From the IMG/VR virus record IMGVR_UViG_3300044796_000662, positions 248,001 through 312,000 of that record: a DNA stretch of 64,000 bases, one strand, 5' to 3'. Numbering within the stretch: position 1 is the stretch's first letter; every line of letters starts with the position of its first letter. Position numbers and translations under genes: made by a program. Shown one piece after another: positions 25,493 to 53,325 of this stretch. The notes beneath the pieces are model-generated. The model searched no databases and was not told where the DNA came from. It was given only the letters and a program-made list of their open reading frames with translations.

Positions 25493-25515
25493 GTTCATCC
25501 TCATCTGGGTTGTAG

Positions 25516-25899
25516 TGGAGCTGGGCGGAATCGAACCGCCGTCTCCAAGAACGTCCTGACCGTCGTTTACGATGCGTAGCCTGATCCTCAGGCGGGATCC
25601 CCTCTGAACCTCGGGGCGGGTTTGCAAGCCATCGCTCTTGCGAGCTGGGAGACGTGCGGCCCTAGACCCTCAGAATGCTCGCTCCCTCATTGGGTCAAAG
25701 GCGGGGAGCCCAGCCTCAAGGGGTTGACGATTCTAGTGATCAGGTTGAGGCGCCCTGATCGAATCGGCTCAGGCCGCGCGGGCCTGGGCGACGCCGTTGT
25801 CGTTGGCAGGTATTTCGCCTCGATTTATTTGAGCGGGTCGAGGAGCCCGCTTACACGTAGACGATCGTTCGGTTCCCGGATCGAAACCAGGGCAGCCCC
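25516..25899 (-). ncRNA. ssrA: tmRNA, tag (A)ANDNGVAQARAA at 25769-25807
   Basis: 5' GGGGCTG / 3' CAGCTCCA acceptor with G3.U70, T arm, internal ANDN...AA* tag. Confidence 0.95.
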
Positions 25900-41880: not shown

Positions 41881-42471
41881 CTACTTCTGCACGTCGTCGA
41901 TCCAGTAGGCGTCGAGGTCGGGCAGCTCCCAGCGAAGGCCGGTGCTGAGCGCGTACTTCCATGCGTAGTCCTTGGTCCAACCGAAGAGCTTCATCCCGAC
42001 AAGGGCCGAGATCATCCCGCCGCGGTCACGGTCGTGGACACACCCCCAAACGACCACATCTCCTCGGGCATGAGCGTCGAGGATGGCGTTGACGGCCTTG
42101 TCCACGTCGCTCTTCTTGGGCTTCACGAAGACAGTGAGAGGCTTGTCGTCCTCGGGGGTCAGCGGGACCTTGATGACGTTCCAACCGAACGCGTAGGCGG
42201 GCGACTCGTCTCCTTCCGCGTCGTCGTGCAGGACAACCTTGGTCACCCTCCTGTTGGGCTCCTCTACGATGTTCCGCAGAGCGTTCCAGGCCGCCTGATC
42301 GGACGGGATGCCCGTGCGCCACATCCCCGGAGCAAAGTTGTGCAGGTTGGGGATCCCCTGCGTGTTCGTGTCTGCGTACGAGGCAGGCAGGCAGCCTACC
42401 AAGAAGCAGGCGACCAGAAGTCCGACGATGAGTACCAGGACGATGGGGAGGGCCAAGATGAAACGGGCCAT
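41881..42471 (-). CDS. Secreted/membrane Cys-based phosphatase-like protein
   Basis: Signal-like N-terminus; CVHDRDRGG (Cx5R P-loop). Confidence 0.7.
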   Translation of the reverse strand: MARFILALPIVLVLIVGLLVACFLVGCLPASYADTNTQGIPNLHNFAPGMWRTGIPSDQAAWNALRNIVEEPNRRVTKVVLHDDAEGDESPAYAFGWNVIKVPLTPEDDKPLTVFVKPKKSDVDKAVNAILDAHARGDVVVWGCVHDRDRGGMISALVGMKLFGWTKDYAWKYALSTGLRWELPDLDAYWIDDVQK

Positions 42472-44003: not shown

Positions 44004-44579
44004 TCAGATGCGGATTGTGCCCGCTGGGGACACACTGAAGCCGATCTTCTGCCCGGTTGCGAAGTAGACCTTGATCGCGTGCGCGATGTACGCGCTCGTG
44101 ATGGCAAGGAACGGAAGATGCTCCCCGTTCTCGCAGGTCGCCGCGCTCGTGTTGGACTCGTCGTCGATGACGAAGTCCTCGTCCCAGACGACGCGTCCGA
44201 ACTGCCCGTCCGGCGCCACAGCCCCGTGCAGGCACGGGAGCTTGTTGGCTCGAACGAAGGTCTGGATGACCCGGCGCGAGGCGCCGTTGTCGAGGCAGTC
44301 GAGCACGAGGTCGCTCTTGCCGAGCAGCTCCTTGACGTTGTCGGCGACGAGCTTGTTGCCGTTCGTCTCGATCTTCGTGCCGAAGAGGAAGTTCATCGTC
44401 TGCTTCACGGCCTCGACCTTCGCCTTGCGGAGATGAGTCTTGCCGTGGAACTGGCTCTGCGTGTTCTTCTGCTCGACGTGATCGAAGTCGATGACCTTGA
44501 TGGCCACCTCGACGTTGCGGATGAACTGCACGACGTGGGAGCCGAGCGCTCCGACGCCGACGATGGTGATGTTCTTCAT
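44004..44579 (-). CDS. ThiF/E1-like adenylating enzyme
   Basis: GVGALGS, IDFDHVEQKN, K..K, DCLDN..SR, candidate catalytic Cys ATCE. Confidence 0.9.
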   Translation of the reverse strand: MKNITIVGVGALGSHVVQFIRNVEVAIKVIDFDHVEQKNTQSQFHGKTHLRKAKVEAVKQTMNFLFGTKIETNGNKLVADNVKELLGKSDLVLDCLDNGASRRVIQTFVRANKLPCLHGAVAPDGQFGRVVWDEDFVIDDESNTSAATCENGEHLPFLAITSAYIAHAIKVYFATGQKIGFSVSPAGTIRI

Positions 44580-44636: not shown

Positions 44637-44909
44637 TCAGCTACCGAACGGCGTCTTCGGCCTGATCTGGATCAGGTTGAACGGACGCTGCTCGTTCGGA
44701 CGGAAGCGGTCCACCACGAAGTCGGTGAAGTCCACGTCCGCGTCAGCGCGGATGCCGGGCACGCTGCCGTTGGTGACAGCCTCCGTGATCCACTGCTTGA
44801 TGTCACCCTCGGTCGCGTCGAACGGCGCCGGGTTCGGGAGGTCGCCGTTCTGGCCCCTCCAGGTGATGTTGACACGTGCCTCGTGAGCGAGGATGTCGTT
44901 CTGGTTCAT
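44637..44909 (-). CDS. Ubiquitin-like (beta-grasp) protein, C-terminus PKTPFG-S
   Basis: 90 aa, SD AGGAGG, beta-grasp-like pattern, near-terminal Gly, between JAB and E1. Confidence 0.7.
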   Translation of the reverse strand: MNQNDILAHEARVNITWRGQNGDLPNPAPFDATEGDIKQWITEAVTNGSVPGIRADADVDFTDFVVDRFRPNEQRPFNLIQIRPKTPFGS

Positions 44910-45319
44910 GACGTTGCCTCCTTCTGATCTGATCGCGCGGTTTGAATCATGAGCGAGTGGGCGCGCAGCTCCACAAGCCATCCAGGCTCGTCCTGAACGA
45001 CGAAGCGTTGGTAGTCGTACTTTCCAGGCCCCGACCAGCGGGCCACGATGATGCGGTCGGAGCTGGTGATCCACCACTCCAAGCGCCGGTCGAGTGCCTG
45101 CTCCACTGCGTGGAAGGTTGTCACATCCGTCCACGACGGCCTGGGCATGCCCGAGCCGGGGTGGCTGTGTGCGAACCCGAGCAGGTTGTCTCGGTTGTCC
45201 CAGAGGACGTCCCACAGCTTGCGGCTGTCAGGAAGAGAACCGCCCGTGCGGTCTTCCGGAAGGTGCCAGTAGATGGGCTCCCCCTTAAGGTTGACCACCA
45301 CTCCTGCTTCGATCGTCAT
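44906..45319 (-). CDS. JAB/MPN+ metallopeptidase
   Basis: N-terminal E, HSHP...PSWTD (JAMM motif). Confidence 0.88.
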   Translation of the reverse strand: MTIEAGVVVNLKGEPIYWHLPEDRTGGSLPDSRKLWDVLWDNRDNLLGFAHSHPGSGMPRPSWTDVTTFHAVEQALDRRLEWWITSSDRIIVARWSGPGKYDYQRFVVQDEPGWLVELRAHSLMIQTARSDQKEATS

Positions 45320-45489
45320 GGGCGTCCCCGCTTCTGTTCGAGCCAGGCTTGGGCAGCGTCGCCGACGAGCGCGTTCTTCTGAGCCCACTGCTTCAGGCTC
45401 AGACCACTGCCCTCTTCCTTCCAACGTCGGATGAGGCGTTGACGCTCGCGGCGACCCAGACCCTTGCTCTTCTCTTCGTCAGTCCTCAT
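45316..45489 (-). CDS. 57-aa hypothetical protein (not in ORF track)
   Basis: MRTDEEKSKG...LKQWAQKN...GRP*; ATGA-coupled to JAB. Confidence 0.55.
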   Translation of the reverse strand: MRTDEEKSKGLGRRERQRLIRRWKEEGSGLSLKQWAQKNALVGDAAQAWLEQKRGRP

Positions 45490-46426
45490 CGACGTGCCGG
45501 AAGACGACGAGGCGTCTTTCCTTATCTGCTTGGTGGATTACACCGGGCAGAGACTCCAACGTGAAGTAGTTGTCTCCGCGCTCTCCGGTGCCGTGATCGA
45601 TCAGACAGATCCCAGCGTCGATGATCCTGAGGGTCTGAGCGTCACATACGCACTCGAAACGGCGCCGCAGCATGCGGTAGACCACCACCATCTCGTTGCG
45701 CTTACCTGCACGCCTGTGGTCAAGGTACTCGGCACCGCCAACGGCCAGAGCCGCACGCGCTGCCTCTCCGAAGTCTTCCTTGGCCATGTCGCGACGGCCC
45801 TGTGCGTTGCCGAGCTGCTCGAAGAGCTTCAGGCGACGTTCTTCACGTGCCAGGCGCTCCTCTTCCTCTCGACGCTGCCGCTCAAGCTCCTCACGCCGGC
45901 GCTGAGCCTCGATGCGCTGGTAGGCTTCCATGCGGAAAGCCGCGTCCAGAGCAGGCGCAACGCCCGCGATCATGTTCACCGACTCCTTCTGGTCGAAGAA
46001 CGACTTGAGCACCTCCTCTTCGGGGCCGAGCGGCATCTCCTGCCGCGCGTACACGAGAGGGCCGCCCTCATGCGTCCGTCCCGCGCTGACGCGAGCGAAC
46101 CTGTCGAGTCCCGGTTCGACGAGGAAGACAGGCTCCGAAGAGGCTGCGATCTTCGCCGGATTGGGATCGACTCGAACATCGTCTGCGATGAAGCGGTCTC
46201 CGACGAGGTACCCGCTCTTGAGATGGCGGAGCGACTCGACGGCGGCTTCGGCTTCCTTGCCGAAGGTCGCCTCACGGCTCTTCAGGTGGAAGGTGTACCA
46301 CCCGTGCTCGGGCGGCCTCTTCCCCTTGACCCGCCACGTACGCTCCCCGGCTCGGAGTTCGTTGTCTCCGACCCACGGCGCGACGAGGGTCTCGTCCGCC
46401 GCTTGAAGCAGATCCCTCCAGCCCAT
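45479..46426 (-). CDS. Putative divergent E2-like protein
   Basis: Coiled-coil linker, then DAGICL...FTLESLPGVI resembling the UBC GxICL...TL..VL core; operon context. Confidence 0.5.
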   Translation of the reverse strand: MGWRDLLQAADETLVAPWVGDNELRAGERTWRVKGKRPPEHGWYTFHLKSREATFGKEAEAAVESLRHLKSGYLVGDRFIADDVRVDPNPAKIAASSEPVFLVEPGLDRFARVSAGRTHEGGPLVYARQEMPLGPEEEVLKSFFDQKESVNMIAGVAPALDAAFRMEAYQRIEAQRRREELERQRREEEERLAREERRLKLFEQLGNAQGRRDMAKEDFGEAARAALAVGGAEYLDHRRAGKRNEMVVVYRMLRRRFECVCDAQTLRIIDAGICLIDHGTGERGDNYFTLESLPGVIHQADKERRLVVFRHVDED

Positions 46427-46503: not shown

Positions 46504-48399
46504 TCAGGCAGCCCAGGCGGGCTTGACGAGCAGCTTCGTGTTGACGATCTCGTCCACGAGCGAGACGCGCTGCGGAGCAACGGCCACGTTCGTGATGCCA
46601 ACCGGCGTCGCTGCGATGAGGTTGCGGATCGCACGCGGAATCGCGTACGGGTCCACGCGCCCATCCTGCGCGAGGTTGGCGAAGATCCGGTCGTCGATCG
46701 GCAGGCACGGGATGCCGAGCTGCGCCGCCGTATCACGGACAGCGCGGTCGCCTTCCCCACCGCCGACCTTCAGAAGACCGAACGCGATCGGGTTGATGCC
46801 CGAGTTGCGAACGTGCGGCATGAAGGCAGGAGCCTGCTCGTCGCCGACGAAGATCATGATGGCATCTTCACCCGGCCCCGGCTTGCGATCCTGGAGAGCA
46901 CGGACACCCTCACCGTACGAGGTACCACCGTTCGCGGCGATGCCGCGGAAGGCGTTCTCGATGCCGGCAGCCGATGCGTGCTTGATCTCGATGCGGCGCC
47001 CCGCCGTGTTGAAGACGGACACGTGCAGCTTGTCCAGCGGGAATGCCTGGAGGAACTGCGCGATGTACTTCTTCGCGGTCGGGATGCTGTTCACCATCGA
47101 GCCCGAGATGTCCAGGATGAAGTAGATGACGAGGCCCTTCATGACCTCGACGACCGCCTTCTGGAGCGCCTTGTCCGCGCCCTCCTGGAGCTTCTCCTTC
47201 ACTTCCTTGGACTTGACGCGCGTCGCGATGTTCGCCGCACGCATGTCCTCGGAAGCCGCATTCGCCTTCTCCCACCGCTCACGGACGTCCTGGACCTGCA
47301 TGAGGCCCAGCTCCTCGATGGTGGGAGTCAGGATGACGAGGTCCTTGTTCGAGAGCGAACCGGCCTCGATTGCGGCCGTCAGGATGGCCCGCGTCACACC
47401 GTTCGGCAGCATACCGACGATGCGCTTGTAGTTCGGGCGGTCCTTGACGATCCTCTCGCAGATCTGCTCCTCGGAGAGACCGACCCACGTTTCGGCTGCC
47501 TCGACGGCCTGGCCGATGGCCAGGGTCCTGCGACCATCCTTCGCCTGCGCCTGCTTCCAGCGCAACGTTTCGAAGAACTTCGTCGTGGTCGGCTTGTACC
47601 CGACGCGACGCGCGAGGTCCATGACGGTCTGACGGAAGCCAGCCTTCACGAGCCCTTCGAGCAGCTTCGGGTTCTCCTCACGGAAGAGGAGCCACTTCTC
47701 GACCGCCTTCTCCCAGCGACCGAGGAACGGCCTACGAGCCGACTTGCCGAACCCAAGCTCGCGGTTGATGGCCGCGACGCCAGGGAGCATGAGCACGTCG
47801 TACACGCGGAGCAGGAGCTTCGGGTTGAAGTCCTTGCCGTCCTTCGTGTGGAGCAGCATCATCGCCTCGCCGATGTCCCTGTAGTCCTCGTCGTGGAAGG
47901 CGACCTTCTTGCCGCCGTTCTCGGTATCGAGGACCGGGTCACCCTTGCGCGTCTGGACGAGCATGAGGGCGGCCAGGATCACCTTGAGGTCGCGGTGCTC
48001 CTGCTTGAACGCGTAGCTCGCCCAGTGGGCAGCGAACTCGTTGTCCTTCGCGTAGACGTCCGCAGCCTGCCGGTACATCCAGGTCGCGACCTCCGGGAAG
48101 ATGCCGGCCGAGCGGTACTCGCCGATGATGTTCCCGTTGTCCGCCTTGATCTGGTAGCCGTTGTCGGCCAGCGTGCCGACCTTGACCTTCGTGGTCTTCC
48201 GGCCGACCTTGTTGACCTGGTAGACGACCTTCTTCTTGTCGTCACCCTCGACCTTGTGGGTCACGGGGGTCCAGCGGACCCCGATCCTTGCGGACGGGTC
48301 GCGCACGACCATGCCAGGACGGTTGTGGACCATGTGGTCCGTGTAGCCGATGAGGGTCTGGATGATCCCCTCGGCAGCGCTCAGGTTTTCCTTGTCCAT
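46504..48399 (-). CDS. Ro60/TROVE-like helical domain plus C-terminal vWA protein
   Basis: 631 aa; helical N-part (KDNEFAAHWASYA), MIDAS DISGS...GGTS...GDEQ; start set at ATG 48399 because upstream is tRNA. Confidence 0.7.
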   Translation of the reverse strand: MDKENLSAAEGIIQTLIGYTDHMVHNRPGMVVRDPSARIGVRWTPVTHKVEGDDKKKVVYQVNKVGRKTTKVKVGTLADNGYQIKADNGNIIGEYRSAGIFPEVATWMYRQAADVYAKDNEFAAHWASYAFKQEHRDLKVILAALMLVQTRKGDPVLDTENGGKKVAFHDEDYRDIGEAMMLLHTKDGKDFNPKLLLRVYDVLMLPGVAAINRELGFGKSARRPFLGRWEKAVEKWLLFREENPKLLEGLVKAGFRQTVMDLARRVGYKPTTTKFFETLRWKQAQAKDGRRTLAIGQAVEAAETWVGLSEEQICERIVKDRPNYKRIVGMLPNGVTRAILTAAIEAGSLSNKDLVILTPTIEELGLMQVQDVRERWEKANAASEDMRAANIATRVKSKEVKEKLQEGADKALQKAVVEVMKGLVIYFILDISGSMVNSIPTAKKYIAQFLQAFPLDKLHVSVFNTAGRRIEIKHASAAGIENAFRGIAANGGTSYGEGVRALQDRKPGPGEDAIMIFVGDEQAPAFMPHVRNSGINPIAFGLLKVGGGEGDRAVRDTAAQLGIPCLPIDDRIFANLAQDGRVDPYAIPRAIRNLIAATPVGITNVAVAPQRVSLVDEIVNTKLLVKPAWAA

Positions 48400-49718: not shown

Positions 49719-49994
49719 TTACTCGTTCGCGAGCCGTGCCAGGACATGTCCATGACACGCTTTCGGGTCGCACCAGCAACCCAAAACCTTGCCTCGGAGG
49801 ACCCGCTTCGCCATCGCCACGAGGGCGGGCTGCGTCTTGATCCACTCCGTGTACCGCGCGATGGCCTCTTCGCGCGTCTCGACCTTGTACTTAGCCTTCG
49901 TGCCCTCCTTGTGCGAGAAGGGGTTGCCCCAGATCGTCGTGCGGTCGATGAGCACGTCGTAGGGCTCGCGCTTGCAGTGGACGACGAGCTTCAC
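49719..49994 (-). CDS. DUF4326-like protein
   Basis: VVHCK..YDVLIDR..WGNPF...LRGKVLGCWC.PKACHG. Confidence 0.8.
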   Translation of the reverse strand: MKLVVHCKREPYDVLIDRTTIWGNPFSHKEGTKAKYKVETREEAIARYTEWIKTQPALVAMAKRVLRGKVLGCWCDPKACHGHVLARLANE

Positions 49995-50980
49995 TCCGCA
50001 GCGACGTCCGCGGTGCGGTCCTTGGCTGTCAGGCTCAGAATCTTGCACGTCACCGCTGAACGCGTCCGATTCATCTGAGCGGCGATCACCCCACGGTCGA
50101 TGCCCTCTGCATGGAGCTGCGCAAGCTTCTGGAGGTCCACTTCTGTCCAGGGGTTCGCTTCACGCCGCTGAAGCGACGAGGCGATGCGATCAATGTCCAG
50201 GCGTTTGACGCCCCAACGACCGTGCGGAATGCCGAGCCTCTTCAAGTGCACCGTGAGGGTCTTCGGCTTGTAACCGAGGCGCTCAGCGGCGGACCGGATG
50301 GTCTCGTTGACCTGTGAGCGCTTGGCCTTGGCTTCCGCGCTCTTCTTGATGGCGTCGTCGATGTCCTTCGAGGGGATGCGCCAGACCGCGTGCTTCTTGG
50401 CCGGCGGCTGAAGCCCGCTCTCGATGAGCTGCGACTTCAACGTGTCCACGCACATGCCGCGCCGGCAAGCTGCGTCGAAGAGGGTCTCCGAGTCGCACCA
50501 TACGGACACGGCGTAGTCCACGTCCCCCGGCCGTACGATGAACACGTGGTACTTGGCCTTGCGTTCGACGAGGGAGTAGCTCGGCGAGGGCTTGATGCCC
50601 GCGTGCGCCAAGATGTTCTTCAAGGTCTCGACCATGTAGCCCGTGCGCTTTGCCGCATGGGCCATGCGCTCCCAACCGTTTGGGCAGCCGACCTTCAAGC
50701 CAAGAGTGTGCTTCGCGTACTGGTAGACGCCCGCCTTCGTGCGGTCAAGCAACTTGGCGATACGGTCAAGAGGCTCGGCGCCCCACAAGACCCGAAGACG
50801 ATCCGCCTCTTCCTGCGACCAGTGCGAGCGCTTGGTCAGACCAAGCTTGCGGGCCATCTGGTAGATGCTGCGCCTCGAACGATGAGGCAACGCCTTCTTG
50901 ATAGCCCTGTAACCCCGGCGGTACTTGAACTTGCTCTGGAGGAGTGTCTTCTCCTCCTCGGTCCAGAACGTGTAGGCCAT
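49991..50980 (-). CDS. Multi-HTH/Myb-like DNA-binding protein
   Basis: Repeated WT/SxEE...L...IA..L.RT..V units. Confidence 0.7.
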   Translation of the reverse strand: MAYTFWTEEEKTLLQSKFKYRRGYRAIKKALPHRSRRSIYQMARKLGLTKRSHWSQEEADRLRVLWGAEPLDRIAKLLDRTKAGVYQYAKHTLGLKVGCPNGWERMAHAAKRTGYMVETLKNILAHAGIKPSPSYSLVERKAKYHVFIVRPGDVDYAVSVWCDSETLFDAACRRGMCVDTLKSQLIESGLQPPAKKHAVWRIPSKDIDDAIKKSAEAKAKRSQVNETIRSAAERLGYKPKTLTVHLKRLGIPHGRWGVKRLDIDRIASSLQRREANPWTEVDLQKLAQLHAEGIDRGVIAAQMNRTRSAVTCKILSLTAKDRTADVAAE

Positions 50981-51002
50981 CGACTAGAAGCCGTACACCA
51001 TG

Positions 51003-51257
51003 TCACTCGTCGGGATGAGAGGATTCGAACCTCCGACCCCCTGGTCCCGAACCAGGTGCGCTACCAGACTGCGCTACATCCCGTTGCTTCAGCATCTTCG
51101 CGTACCGCTTCTCGCGGTCCCTCACCGTAACCTTGCCAACCCCAAGCGCGTTGGCGATGAACCAGGTCTGCGAACCGTCCGCCCGCATCTGCGCCACCTG
51201 CTTGCAGAAGCGCTCCAGTTCCTCGTCCGACAGGTTGCGGTTGTCAATCGACGCCAT
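51003..51257 (-). CDS. Small HTH protein (3' end overlaps tRNA-Pro)
   Basis: G.SQTWFIANALGVGKVTVR. Confidence 0.5.
   Translation of the reverse strand: MASIDNRNLSDEELERFCKQVAQMRADGSQTWFIANALGVGKVTVRDREKRYAKMLKQRDVAQSGSAPGSGPGGRRFESSHPDE
51010..51083 (-). tRNA. tRNA-Pro(CGG)
   Basis: Canonical, loop TTCGGGA. Confidence 0.93.
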
Positions 51258-51279
51258 GACCCCCTAGCCTATCACACAG

Positions 51280-51352
51280 TGCGGCCTTCCGGAATCGAAC
51301 CGGCATGGTCCGTGTTTCAAACGGATGCAATCACCAGACTTGCTCAGGCCGC
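51280..51352 (-). tRNA. tRNA-Phe(GAA)
   Basis: Loop TTGAAAC. Confidence 0.82.
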
Positions 51353-51353
51353 G

Positions 51354-51424
51354 TTGCGGGCCGGGGAGTCGCGCCCCGTCAGGCTGGCTTATGAGACCGA
51401 CCCAGCATCTCCGCTTGCCCCGCG
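51354..51424 (-). pseudogene. Degenerate tRNA(CAT)
   Basis: Loop CTCATAA, non-canonical T loop CGCGACT. Confidence 0.45.
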
Positions 51425-51425
51425 G

Positions 51426-51498
51426 TGGTCACGGAGGGACTCGAACCCCCGACGCACTGCTCTTCAGGCAGTCGCTCTACCAACTGAGCTACGCGACC
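51426..51498 (-). tRNA. tRNA-Phe(GAA)
   Basis: Canonical, loop CTGAAGA. Confidence 0.92.
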
Positions 51499-51514
51499 AT
51501 GTTTTTCGTGAACG

Positions 51515-52018
51515 TCAGGTTGTCGGTGGCTCCTCGGGAGGAGGCAACGACAGCGTGTGAACTTGCTCTACCGGAACCCCGAGCATCGCTGCGATCTGCT
51601 CTCGTTCGCTCTGACCCACGGCGGGCTCGGCCACCTTGGGCGGCTCCTCTTCCTCCCACTTGATGTCCCCGGTCTCGTTGACCTTGACGATGCAGGCCCA
51701 GCATCCCCGCATGTCCTTGTCGAAGATGTAGCCGGGCGCTTCAGTCGAGTGCGTGTGCAGCTTGCGCCAGGCTTCCCACTGCCCGCCCGCCTCAACCATC
51801 TCGTGGTGGTCGAAGCCGTCGATGCCCTTGAGCAGGAAGCGGTTGTTCATGCCGAGGATACGGGCGAAGTCCCTGTTCTTCGCCTTGACGCGCACCGTAC
51901 CAGCGCGGGGGTCAAGCCACCGTGCCTGCGTGTTGCCGCAGCGGCAGACCGTCCAACCGCACTCGGGGTCAAGGGCTCGGATGTCGAGGCACTTCGCGCA
52001 GAGCAGAGCTTTCGTCAT
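51515..52018 (-). CDS. Hypothetical Zn-binding protein
   Basis: CAKC...CRCG; GGTGTA 10 nt upstream. Confidence 0.65.
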   Translation of the reverse strand: MTKALLCAKCLDIRALDPECGWTVCRCGNTQARWLDPRAGTVRVKAKNRDFARILGMNNRFLLKGIDGFDHHEMVEAGGQWEAWRKLHTHSTEAPGYIFDKDMRGCWACIVKVNETGDIKWEEEEPPKVAEPAVGQSEREQIAAMLGVPVEQVHTLSLPPPEEPPTT

Positions 52019-52035
52019 GCCCTCGCTCTACACCA

Positions 52036-52485
52036 AAAGCGGAACCCCGGAGAGTAGCCTTCCCCGGGGTCCCTTTGTGCGACTTGCGCCGCTCGTCTTT
52101 TTAGGGTGACCACTGGCGTTTAAGGTCGGCAGTGAGTCCTGAGCCTCTAGTGTCCTGTCGCTAGACGACCGCCCTGTAGGTGTTGCGTAGCTGCGCGAGG
52201 CAGCAGCAGGGTGGGCGGGATTCAAACCCGCGTCCTAGAGAATTGTTGCCTTCCGTTCGATTGGCCTCCCGACGATGTTGCTGAGTCTGGAGTAGTAGTC
52301 TCAGGCTGAGCCGCGCTACGGGTTGCGTCTGCCAATTTCGCCACCCCCGTGTTGTCAGGTCCAGCCTTTACGGCCGGGCCTTGCACCCTGCGGTGCAGTA
52401 CGGGGGGAAGGATTCGAACCTTCAGCTTTCGCCGTCGCGCTAGATGAGTCTGAATCTGAGTCTGAGCTTGAACTCCACTCTTGTC
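52036..52485 (-). ncRNA. ~450-nt RNA with two tandem permuted tRNA-like domains
   Basis: Two T arm > acceptor > D arm units, (A/G)CTCAG repeats, own GGTGTA at 52487-52492, terminal hairpin plus T tract. Confidence 0.72.
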
Positions 52486-52499
52486 TTACACCGCCGAGG

Positions 52500-53252
52500 T
52501 CACGGCGCGAAGACGAAATCGAAGATGGGCTTGCCGGCGGACAGATCCTTCGGCACGTCGTGGCTGTTGGCGGTCTCCTTGGCCTGCTTGACCGCGTGCT
52601 GGAGCTTCTCGATCCGAGCGAGCAGGAGATCCTTCTGGTCCATCGGCATCGCCCCGGAATACTTGATGGTCTTCCAGGTGCCGGTGATCTTGTCCTCCGT
52701 AATGAGCTGGACCTGCGCCGGGTGCTCCTTCGAGCCCGGGTGCATCACGAGAGGCACCTGGAGCTTCTTCGTGCGGACCGTCTCGGTCGGCTGCGTCGCG
52801 TAGAGGCTCTGCTCCTTGTCGAGCGTCCACTTCTCGGCCGGGTCGAGCGTCGGCATCTTCTTGACCTCCGTGTAGAGGTCGTCGAGCTGGTGCCCGAGCC
52901 AGAGCAGGTACGTGACCGGGGCATCCTTCAGGATCGTCTTGCCCTCCACGACCACGTCCGCCTTCGCGGAGCAGTTCGTGACGTCGCGCTGGAAGGTCAT
53001 GTCGAACAGCTCGGTCTGCTCCTTCTGAATGGTCTTCAGGAGGACGGCCGTGTTCTGCTGGACGTTCTGGCGCTCGTCCGGCAGCATCTCGTGCAGGTTC
53101 GACTCCGGGTTCGCGTCGCGAGCCGACCACGTCTTCACGTGGCCGCTGAAAAGCGCCGGCTTCTGGAACGTGTGGTAGATGGCGGTCAGCTTCTCGGCCA
53201 CCTTCGTCTTGAGGCCCGACTCGATGGCAAGAACGTGATGCAGCTTCGACAT
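52500..53252 (-). CDS. Uncharacterised coiled-coil protein
   Basis: MSKLHHVLAIE...TNCSAKADVVVEG...LLARIEKLQHAVKQAKETAN. Confidence 0.8.
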   Translation of the reverse strand: MSKLHHVLAIESGLKTKVAEKLTAIYHTFQKPALFSGHVKTWSARDANPESNLHEMLPDERQNVQQNTAVLLKTIQKEQTELFDMTFQRDVTNCSAKADVVVEGKTILKDAPVTYLLWLGHQLDDLYTEVKKMPTLDPAEKWTLDKEQSLYATQPTETVRTKKLQVPLVMHPGSKEHPAQVQLITEDKITGTWKTIKYSGAMPMDQKDLLLARIEKLQHAVKQAKETANSHDVPKDLSAGKPIFDFVFAP

Positions 53253-53325
53253 GGTGGTCTCCGATCCGATTTGGGTCTGTGGGTCAGTAGTACACCGGAC
53301 CCCCACCCCTTCAGGACCGTCAACG

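What the first reader, a model, noticed from the sequence alone, without database searches (positions are those of the whole stretch)
44637..46426. Ubl needs JAB maturation, and a cryptic E2 completes the cascade
Seen: the Ubl ends ...PKTPFG-S-stop, so a single Gly is masked by one residue. The adjacent JAB has an intact HxH..S..D motif, the E1 keeps a Cys (ATCE), and 45479-46426 has DAGICL followed by TLESL..VI. Established: JABs trim Ubl precursors, and UBC domains carry GxICL. Inference: protein conjugation rather than a ThiS/MoaD sulfur relay, since no cofactor-biosynthesis genes are nearby. An Urm1-like tRNA thiolation role remains the alternative, given the tRNA island.
Basis: partly seen in the sequence, partly recalled or inferred. 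Interest (0 to 1): 0.7.

Follow-up and report, generated by a model that had tools for sequence, protein, structure and literature searches.

The report
Huge-phage ubiquitin-like modifier cassette
A giant phage carries a tightly packed, widely conserved gene set for a ubiquitin-like tag, its activating enzyme and its trimming protease, but the neighbouring protein proposed as the missing "E2" does not look like any known E2, although it keeps one invariant cysteine.

Summary
On the minus strand lie a vWA protein, a 315-aa protein "X" (45479-46426), a JAB peptidase, a 90-aa protein ending PKTPFG-S-stop, and a minimal 191-aa ThiF-type E1.

All five genes are present, collinear and on one strand in 63 of 76 related huge-phage loci, including two distant, compact versions. 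In the small-protein family the motif RPKTPFG is nearly invariant. The protein stops at that Gly, or carries 1-5 variable residues, or in one case 52. This is the signature of a C-terminal Gly that must be exposed. The JAB (E, HxH, S, D) and E1 (GxGxxG, DxxD, Cys149) catalytic residues are conserved.

The E2 claim is not supported as family membership. Two confident AlphaFold models of X gave no significant UBC match in seven structure searches. No Pfam, PADLOC or NCBIfam E2 model matched, and there is no HPN motif. One 98-kb phage has X without the other four genes. However, Cys274 is invariant in 78 diverse homologues.

The beta-grasp fold of the small protein was not tested by structure. 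Conjugation versus sulfur carrier remains open. The cassette sits inside tRNA arrays in most relatives, yet the 363-kb phage record encodes no sulfur-relay enzymes.

The parts
46504..48399 (-). vWA-domain protein (631 aa). It has an unassigned N-terminal region of about 415 aa and a C-terminal vWA domain with a D-I-S-G-S MIDAS motif. It is the first gene of the cassette.
   Evidence: PF13519 VWA_2 at 1.5e-6. A profile of the family matches BatA/BatB vWA structures. Found upstream of X in 74 of 76 loci. A Ro60/TROVE-like reading is only a lead: ESM features and hhalign probability 16%.
45479..46426 (-). It has an N-terminal double beta-barrel (OB/S1-like, residues 1-145), a long Glu/Arg-rich helix (158-204), and a C-terminal alpha/beta domain (208-315) with invariant Cys274 in the motif A-G-I-C-L.
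   Evidence: AlphaFold2 models with pLDDT 92.7 and 86.2. Invariant residues G72, A226, G272, C274, E291 and L306 in 78 sequences. The family has 388 representatives at 50% clustering. No Pfam, NCBIfam, PHROG or PADLOC match.
45605..45607 (-). Codon of Cys274 of X, the invariant cysteine.
45316..45489 (-). Small 57-aa ORF between X and JAB. Its ends overlap both neighbours. It is a variable, non-core insert.
   Evidence: ORF list. tblastn finds it in only 5 of the 76 related huge-phage loci and in none of the five others searched. No family match.
44906..45319 (-). JAB/JAMM metallopeptidase (137 aa) with E4, H51-x-H53, S62 and D65. Its stop overlaps the Ubl start (ATGA).
   Evidence: PF14464 at 6e-6, above the cut-off. 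Motif residues are at least 97% conserved. Present in 75 of 76 loci between X and the Ubl.
44637..44909 (-). Candidate ubiquitin-like modifier (90 aa) from a new family. It ends R-P-K-T-P-F-G89 plus Ser90.
   Evidence: No Pfam or PDB sequence match. hhalign against ThiS/MoaD gives probability at most 0.5%. The fold was not tested by structure.
44640..44645 (-). Codons of Gly89 (the conserved end) and Ser90 (the masking residue).
44004..44579 (-). Minimal E1-like adenylyltransferase (191 aa) of the ThiF/MoeB type. It has G8-x-G10-x-x-G13, D94-x-x-D97 and invariant Cys149. It has no rhodanese domain and no CxxC zinc site.
   Evidence: PF00899 at 1.3e-22. NCBIfam ThiF, MoeB and UbaA matches. PADLOC matches to the E1 part of E1-E2 fusions. 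Invariant columns. The start at M-K-N-I-T-I-V is fixed by homologues.

Best explanation
The five core genes vWA, X, JAB, Ubl and E1 form one operon-like cassette of a huge tRNA-rich phage and encode a self-contained ubiquitin-like modifier system.

Proposed mechanism:
1. The JAB metallopeptidase removes Ser90, or longer tails in relatives, to expose Gly89 of the small protein (inferred).
2. The minimal ThiF-type E1 adenylates that Gly and probably takes it onto its invariant Cys149 (inferred from family chemistry).
3. The activated modifier is then attached to protein targets. JAB also serves as the deconjugase, because it is retained even where the modifier already ends in Gly (inferred).

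X is not a recognisable UBC-family E2. Its invariant Cys274 and its near-obligate linkage to the triad make it the best candidate for the next acceptor, either a non-canonical E2 analogue or a first substrate. The upstream vWA protein would then be an adaptor or target.

My sub-probabilities:
- E1, Ubl and JAB work together: about 0.85.
- The output is protein conjugation: about 0.5.
- X carries the modifier on Cys274: about 0.3.
For: - Gene packing: the X/57-aa ORF, 57-aa ORF/JAB and JAB/Ubl junctions overlap. There are no promoter-like or terminator-like sites on the minus strand within the cassette.
- Synteny: all five genes are present in 63 of 76 IMG/VR loci, and all 63 are collinear on one strand. 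Of 40 loci found with the Ubl as query, 39 lie on contigs also found with X.
- Distant relatives: L080, whose matched X C-terminal domain is 36% identical, keeps a compact cassette with overlapping genes and a Ubl that ends exactly at ...A-F-G. L079 has the Ubl with ...K-V-P-F-G followed by a 52-aa acidic tail.
- C-terminal pattern across 120 homologues: about 22 end at the Gly, about 50 have one variable residue, and the others have 2-5.
- Catalytic residues of JAB and E1 are conserved.
- Cys274 of X is invariant in 78 sequences.
- The 363-kb phage record has no rhodanese, cysteine desulfurase or PP-loop ATPase. The E1 has no rhodanese domain.
Against: - The beta-grasp fold of the small protein was never tested by structure. 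It has no sequence or profile similarity to ThiS/MoaD or to any Pfam or PDB entry.
- X shows no significant structural or sequence similarity to E2/UBC.
- One 98-kb phage record, 95% complete by CheckV, has X and no match to the E1 or Ubl profiles in the whole record; no vWA or JAB match lies within 7 kb of X.
- All the loci come from one related phage lineage, so conserved order could partly reflect shared ancestry rather than function. The gaps between genes vary from 0 to several kb.
- The E1's best matches are sulfur-carrier activators.
- The cassette sits inside tRNA arrays.
Confidence: 0.5

Rival explanations
1. Sulfur-carrier system. The E1 adenylates the small protein, which becomes a C-terminal thiocarboxylate and donates sulfur for thiolation of the phage's many tRNAs or for a small molecule. 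JAB trims the precursor or releases an adduct. X, with its OB-like RNA-binding-type N-terminus and single invariant Cys, acts as a persulfide relay or RNA-docking factor.
For: - The E1's best family matches are ThiF, MoeB, MoeZ and UbaA.
- The cassette lies inside a 52-tRNA plus tmRNA island and is flanked by tRNA arrays in 26 of 31 relatives.
- JAB plus Ubl plus E1 clusters exist in sulfur-assimilation contexts (PMC1779556).
- Urm1 has both a sulfur-carrier and a conjugation role (PMC5349211 abstract).
- The N-terminal domain of X gives weak S1/OB-type matches: exosome caps, RNase R/II, IF1 and ribosomal protein S1.
Against: - No rhodanese, cysteine desulfurase or PP-loop ATPase is present in the 363-kb record. 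The record is 76% complete, and the host could supply these enzymes.
- The E1 lacks a rhodanese domain.
- The modifier ends in a single F-G rather than the G-G that I recall for ThiS, MoaD, Urm1, SAMP and TtuB. This is from memory.
- No profile similarity to ThiS/MoaD.
Confidence: 0.22
2. Two separate modules that are only syntenic. JAB, Ubl and E1 form an E2-independent modifier system, as in archaeal SAMP/UbaA. vWA and X form an unrelated pair, possibly a Ro60-like RNA-quality-control particle linked to the tRNA island. Cys274 of X then has a role unrelated to the modifier.
For: - X occurs without the other four genes in record G305.
- In Virus Rctr197k the vWA-X pair and the Ubl are about 4 kb apart, with the E1 a further 1.5 kb on, and several other genes lie between.
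- The gaps between X and JAB reach 5.7 kb.
- X has no E2 similarity.
- vWA protein: 64 of the 100 listed hits in the feature search fall in the TROVE/Ro60 family set. A collinear hhalign alignment of 273 columns has E 0.0016 but probability of only 16%.
- RtcB lies near the cassette in L002.
- Archaeal SAMP conjugation works with an E1 and a JAMM protease (PMC4443979). That no E2 is known for it is from memory.
Against: - The same order and strand hold in all 63 complete loci.
- The most divergent relative, L080, packs all five genes with overlaps. This is hard to explain without selection for co-expression.
- TROVE membership is not established: no Pfam or PDB profile match.
Confidence: 0.23

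Closest known systems
Bacterial Bil-type operons (Ubl + JAB + E1-like + E2-like; class 6d of Iyer, Burroughs and Aravind 2006, PMC1779556)
   Same: They share a small protein with a conserved C-terminal Gly, a JAB peptidase and a ThiF-type E1 in one operon. They also share a further protein with a conserved Cys that is proposed as the transfer step.
   Different: - Here the genes are phage-encoded, not host defence genes.
- The Cys protein is not detectably UBC-like and has an OB-like N-terminus and an ER-rich helix.
- A vWA protein replaces the alpha-helical partner.
- The modifier family has no profile similarity to known Ubls.
- The E1 is a bare 191-aa adenylation domain.
CBASS Cap2 (E2-E1 fusion) and Cap3 (JAB) (PMC10097602)
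   Same: The E1 domain gives PADLOC matches to the E1 part of E1-E2 fusions (4e-14). A JAB is the antagonist or processing enzyme.
   Different: - There is no fused E2 and no CD-NTase.
- A separate Ubl is present, rather than the cyclase C-terminus.
Archaeal SAMP/UbaA/HvJAMM1 and yeast Urm1/Uba4 (E2-independent, dual sulfur-carrier and conjugation systems; PMC4443979, PMC5349211)
   Same: They combine an E1, a Ubl and a JAMM protease without a canonical E2. They have a possible link to tRNA thiolation. NCBIfam matches the SAMP-activating E1 model at 1.8e-16.
   Different: - No sequence similarity to ThiS/MoaD, the fold family of those modifiers.
- A single-Gly F-G end.
- No rhodanese domain.
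- Two additional conserved partners (vWA and X).
JAB-processed sulfur carriers CysO/Mec+ and QbsE/QbsD (from memory, not checked here)
   Same: A JAB removes C-terminal residues or adducts from a Ubl activated by a MoeB-like E1. This shows that trimming alone does not prove conjugation.
   Different: Those clusters carry the biosynthetic enzymes (CysM or the quinolobactin genes) and E1s with rhodanese domains. None is present here.
Bub pathways (Ye et al. 2024, PMC11601596)
   Same: A diverged bacterial Ubl/E1/E2 system shows that the chemistry and folds of these cascades can depart from the canon.
   Different: Bub works through oxyester intermediates and uses a serine protease. Here both the E1 and X keep invariant cysteines, and the protease is a JAB.
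Atg8/Atg4 (resemblance from memory)
   Same: The modifier ends ...F-G followed by one removable residue.
   Different: Atg8 is cut by a cysteine protease and attached to lipid through a UBC-like E2. No homology is shown here.

Membership tests
E2 / UBC superfamily (for X, 45479-46426) | Sequence-profile match to UQ_con or the prokaryotic E2 families | tested here: not met
   No Pfam hit for X or for any of 78 family members at E up to 1. No PADLOC E1-E2 model hits X. PF00179 is not found in the phage record, but that model also rang in no control genome.
E2 / UBC superfamily (for X) | UBC fold (N-terminal helix, four-stranded meander, active-site loop, crossover helix) recognised by structure comparison | tested here: inconclusive
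E2 / UBC superfamily (for X) | H-P-N motif upstream of the catalytic Cys and G-x-[LIVP]-C-[LIV] spacing (signature recalled from memory) | tested here: not met
   The sequence reads T-L-R-I-I-D-A-G-I-C-L. There is no H-P-N, and the Gly is one residue, not two, before the Cys. Some prokaryotic E2-like proteins also lack the His (PMC1779556).
E2 / UBC superfamily (for X) | Conserved catalytic cysteine | tested here: met
   Cys274 is invariant in 78 sequences down to 31% identity.
E2 / UBC superfamily (for X) | Forms a thioester with the modifier; binds the E1 | not testable with these tools
   The single complex-prediction job gave no verdict and is not used as evidence.
E1-like adenylyltransferase (ThiF/MoeB/Uba) | PF00899 above its gathering score, with G-x-G-x-x-G and the Asp motif of the adenylation site | tested here: met
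   80.6 bits against a cut-off of 28.1. G8, G10, G13, D94 and D97 are invariant.
E1-like adenylyltransferase (ThiF/MoeB/Uba) | Cysteine in the crossover-loop position | tested here: met
   Cys149 (A-T-C-E) is invariant in 55 sequences. Its equivalence to MoeB Cys187 and ThiF Cys184 is judged from motif similarity recalled from memory.
MoeB/ThiF/MoeZ sulfur-carrier activators specifically | CxxC zinc site and/or C-terminal rhodanese domain | tested here: not met
   The protein has 191 aa, no CxxC pair and no rhodanese match. All equivalog NCBIfam scores are far below their cut-offs.
JAB/JAMM metallopeptidase | E ... H-x-H ... S-x-x-D metal site and a Pfam match | tested here: met
   PF14464 scores 26.5 bits against a cut-off of 25. 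E4, H51, H53, S62 and D65 are at least 97% conserved. The spacer between the second His and the Ser is 8 residues rather than the usual 7.
Ubiquitin-like beta-grasp modifier (ThiS/MoaD/Ub) | Beta-grasp fold | not tested
Only the residue pattern strand-strand-helix-strand-strand, read by eye from the alignments, suggests the fold.
Ubiquitin-like beta-grasp modifier (ThiS/MoaD/Ub) | Sequence or profile similarity to a known Ubl family | tested here: not met
   No Pfam hit in 49 members. No PDB profile hit. hhalign against 30 ThiS/MoaD sequences gives probability 0.3-0.5%.
Ubiquitin-like beta-grasp modifier (ThiS/MoaD/Ub) | Conserved C-terminal Gly that is terminal or followed by a variable removable tail; gene adjacent to an E1 | tested here: met
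Ro60 / TROVE-vWA (for the vWA protein) | TROVE module N-terminal to a vWA domain with a MIDAS motif | tested here: inconclusive
   The vWA domain and the D-x-S-x-S motif are present. PF05731 is not matched. The PDB profile search hits only vWA domains. ESM features point to TROVE clusters at 0.90-0.93. hhalign against 16 TROVE proteins gives probability 16% and E 0.0016.

The most novel reading that the evidence does not exclude
Huge phages encode their own protein-tagging cascade. A previously unrecognised modifier family is trimmed by a JAB and activated by a minimal E1. It then passes to Cys274 of X, the founder of a non-UBC class of modifier carrier. X's OB-like domain and rigid ER-rich helix would position it on an RNA-protein target, perhaps the adjacent Ro60-like vWA protein, within the phage's translation and tRNA programme.
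Probability: 0.18. Interest if true: 0.85.

Novelty: new variant of a known kind. Interest (0 to 1): 0.6.

Why it matters
Ubiquitin-like conjugation in bacteria (CBASS Cap2/Cap3, Bil, Bub) has so far been described as host defence against phages. Here the machinery is on the phage side.

- It is conserved in well over a thousand huge-phage sequences.
- Its modifier family and its Cys-bearing partner escape all current profiles.
- It sits in the tRNA island that defines these phages' translation take-over.

If the system conjugates, it would show that phages also tag proteins, and it might reveal a new carrier fold. If it is a sulfur carrier, it would point to phage-directed tRNA thiolation.

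Either way, four unannotated or barely annotated protein families (the vWA protein, X, the Ubl and the minimal E1) gain a testable functional context.

Tried and rejected
- **Complex prediction.** A job with E1, Ubl(1-89) and the X C-terminal domain gave score 0.02 and no verdict. It is no evidence either way.
- **Zinc site in X.** A CxC...C...H zinc site looked plausible in close homologues. I rejected it because C261 and H278 are not conserved in diverse homologues.
- **Cys-His protease reading of X.** Rejected because X has no invariant His.
- **Reference set of prokaryotic E2 sequences.** I searched 301 Myxococcota genomes for PF14461, hoping to build a set for profile-profile comparison. 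Only one sub-threshold hit came back, so I abandoned this.
- **Modifier against ThiS/MoaD.** hhalign found nothing, even after I added divergent members.
- **Atlas structure look-ups for the modifier.** No model is held.
- **Nucleotide search of the phage collection.** No match. Only Virus Rctr197k is found, at protein level.
- **Literature.** Searches for this cassette in jumbo or huge phages found nothing specific. One further search failed on a term that was too short.
- **Promoter and terminator scan.** Nothing informative.
Full report
**Setting**

The window is part of a 362,937-bp virus record. IMG/VR classes it as a provirus, and CheckV puts it at 76% complete. GC content is about 62%. 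The window's long open frames with a plausible gene reading lie on the minus strand, and it holds 52 tRNA genes and a tmRNA. It has no nucleotide-level relative in the phage collection. At protein level the only deposited relative is Virus Rctr197k, a 197-kb partial genome from an enrichment culture.

**Observation check**

Reading the minus strand gives six tightly packed genes:

| Gene | Coordinates | Size |
|---|---|---|
| vWA protein | 46504-48399 | 631 aa |
| X | 45479-46426 | 315 aa |
| small ORF | 45316-45489 | 57 aa |
| JAB | 44906-45319 | 137 aa |
| small protein (candidate Ubl) | 44637-44909 | 90 aa |
| E1 | 44004-44579 | 191 aa |

- The X/57-aa ORF, 57-aa ORF/JAB and JAB/Ubl junctions overlap. 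The other gaps are 77 and 57 nt.
- No promoter-like or terminator-like site lies on the minus strand within the cassette.
T-L-E-S-L-P-G-V-I in X.
- I corrected the JAB and E1 starts, using homologues that all begin M-K-x-[IV]-T-I-V-G-V-G-A-L.

**The recognisable parts**

- *E1.* It matches PF00899 at 1.3e-22. It also matches the ThiF, MoeB, MoeZ and SAMP-E1 NCBIfam models well below their equivalog cut-offs, and the E1 half of PADLOC E1-E2 fusions. In 55 homologues G8, G10, G13, D31, K54, D94, D97, R102 and Cys149 are invariant. It has no rhodanese domain and no CxxC pair.
- *JAB.* It passes PF14464. E4, H51, H53, S62 and D65 are at least 97% conserved.

**The small protein**

It has no Pfam, NCBIfam, PHROG or PADLOC match, alone or across 49 family members. 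It has no PDB profile match. It shows no profile similarity to 30 ThiS/MoaD sequences (hhalign probability 0.3-0.5%).

What speaks for an E1 substrate is its C-terminus. Among 120 homologues of 62-100% identity, R-P-K-T-P-F-G is almost invariant:
- About 22 proteins stop exactly at the Gly.
- About 50 carry one extra residue of almost any kind (G, R, S, A, V, N, K, E, C, Q, F, H).
- The rest mostly carry 2-5 variable residues.

In a distant relative (L079) the motif K-V-P-F-G is followed by a 52-residue acidic tail. In another (L080) the protein ends ...A-F-G-stop. A conserved Gly with a disposable tail, next to a JAB and an E1, is the classical signature of a modifier that must be C-terminally matured.

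The beta-grasp fold itself was not tested. The fold is inferred only from the residue pattern strand-strand-helix-strand-strand, read by eye from the alignments, and from the genomic context.

**Is it one cassette?**

- X has more than 1,282 homologues in the 90% clusters and 388 representatives at 50% clustering. Many lie on contigs of 200-660 kb.
- In 76 IMG/VR loci found with X, tblastn detects the vWA gene in 74, JAB in 75, the small protein in 71 and the E1 in 68, all within 7 kb. All five are present in 63, and all 63 are collinear on one strand.
- Searching with the small protein instead returns the same contigs in 39 of 40 cases.
- The gaps vary from 0 to several kb and contain inserts such as HNH/AP2 genes.
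- All loci belong to one phage lineage, so shared ancestry explains part of the synteny. However, the most divergent relative (L080, whose matched X C-terminal domain is 36% identical) has the five genes packed with overlaps. This argues for selection on co-expression.
- Against obligate linkage: a 98-kb record, 95% complete, has an X homologue and no match to the E1 or Ubl profiles in the whole record, and no vWA or JAB match within 7 kb of X. In Rctr197k the vWA-X pair lies about 4 kb from the Ubl, with the E1 a further 1.5 kb on.

**Is X an E2?**

AlphaFold2 on a 78-sequence alignment gave a confident model (pLDDT 92.7) with three parts:
- a double beta-barrel (residues 1-145);
- a 47-residue Glu/Arg-rich helix (158-204);
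- a C-terminal alpha/beta domain (208-315) with two helices, a four-stranded meander, Cys274 four residues after the last strand, a loop and a helix.

A domain-only model reproduced the last part (pLDDT 86.2). That order of elements is compatible with a minimal UBC/UEV/RWD-like sandwich, but the comparisons do not support membership:
- Foldseek against the PDB with both models, AFDB clusters, Swiss-Prot AFDB, ESM Atlas and BFVD returned no E2, and nothing at E below 0.001 other than unnamed relatives of X itself.
- The nearest shapes are DsbC N-terminal dimerisation domains (TM 0.44).
- No E2 profile matches X or any of 78 relatives.
- There is no H-P-N, and the Gly-Cys spacing differs from the UBC signature.

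On the other side, Cys274 is invariant, together with G272, E291 and L306, while the neighbouring C261 and H278 are not conserved. This rules out the zinc-site and Cys-His protease readings I considered. A single invariant cysteine in a cytoplasmic protein suggests a nucleophile or carrier. So 'works like an E2' remains possible, at about 0.3 in my estimate. 'Is a UBC-family E2' is not supported.

**Conjugation or sulfur relay?**

For a sulfur or tRNA role:
- The E1's nearest families are sulfur-carrier activators.
- The cassette lies in tRNA arrays in 26 of 31 relatives examined.
- The N-terminal domain of X gives weak S1/OB-type matches.
- The vWA protein resembles Ro60/TROVE proteins by language-model features, and there is a weak collinear hhalign alignment (probability 16%).
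- JAB plus Ubl plus E1 triads exist in sulfur-assimilation clusters (PMC1779556).

Against a sulfur or tRNA role:
- The phage record has no rhodanese, cysteine desulfurase or PP-loop ATPase.
- The E1 has no rhodanese domain.
- No cofactor genes are nearby.
- The modifier ends in F-G rather than G-G.
- JAB is retained in lineages whose modifier already ends at Gly, which suggests a deconjugating role beyond maturation. That also fits adduct release in the sulfur-carrier pathways I recall from memory, so it does not decide between the two readings.

I put protein conjugation at about 0.5, a sulfur carrier at about 0.22, and 'the triad conjugates without X, and vWA-X is a separate RNA-linked module' at about 0.23.

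**Comparison with known systems and novelty**

Ubl plus JAB plus E1 (with or without E2) operons have been known in prokaryotes since Iyer et al. 2006. They have since been characterised as the CBASS Cap2/Cap3, Bil and Bub defence pathways (PMC1779556, PMC10097602, PMC11601596). The differences here are:
- the phage origin;
- a modifier family invisible to current profiles;
- a bare 191-aa E1;
- two conserved extra partners, a vWA protein and a Cys protein of unassigned fold.

Four full-text searches found no description of this cassette. I rate it a new variant of a known kind.

**Verdict**

The masked-Gly modifier, the JAB and the E1 hold up, and the Cys of X is invariant. The UBC identity of X fails the sequence and signature tests, and the structure test is inconclusive at best. 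The choice between conjugation and sulfur transfer is unresolved.

Noticed in passing
window 21102-55336: There are 52 tRNA genes and a tmRNA (25515-25899, tag ANDNGVAQARAA), all on the minus strand. Protein-coding genes, including the cassette, are interspersed among them.
   Followed up: partly
window 46504-48399: The vWA protein may be a distant Ro60/TROVE-vWA relative. In the language-model feature search, 64 of the 100 listed hits fall in the TROVE/Ro60 family set, and a collinear hhalign alignment of 273 columns to TROVE proteins has only 16% probability. Pfam and the PDB profile search see only the vWA domain.
   Followed up: partly
L065 6866-8011 (record G305, 98 kb, 95% complete): An X homologue with the A/S-G-I-C-L motif occurs with no match to the E1 or Ubl profiles anywhere in the record. 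No vWA or JAB match lies within 7 kb of it.
   Followed up: yes
L079 8922-9275: This homologue of the small protein has its ...K-V-P-F-G motif followed by a 52-residue tail made almost entirely of Asp and Glu. Many X homologues also end in acidic tails, often finishing with Trp or Tyr.
   Followed up: no
L083-L091: Eight of the nine hits to X in the species-representative genome collection lie in MAGs labelled Myxococcota (Polyangiaceae, Kofleriaceae, Sandaracinaceae); the ninth, a partial hit, is in a Gemmatimonadota MAG. This points either to the host range or to phage contigs binned with their hosts.
   Followed up: no
window 45316-45489: A 57-aa basic ORF overlaps the end of X and the start of JAB. 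tblastn detects it in only 5 of the 76 related huge-phage loci. It has no family match.
   Followed up: partly
window 41881-42471: This 196-aa ORF has a hydrophobic N-terminus and the stretch G-C-V-H-D-R-D-R-G-G, which reads like a C-x5-R phosphatase loop. It has no Pfam or NCBIfam match.
   Followed up: no
L002 1-1458 and 7419-7955: In one relative an RtcB RNA ligase gene lies about 4 kb upstream of the vWA gene. An AP2/HNH-type gene is inserted on the opposite strand between vWA and X.
   Followed up: no
window 49719-53306: Neighbouring genes include a DUF4326 protein (49719-50048), a 329-aa protein with several Myb/GcrA-like HTH repeats (49991-50980), and a DUF7873 protein (52500-53306, E 2e-84).
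   Followed up: no
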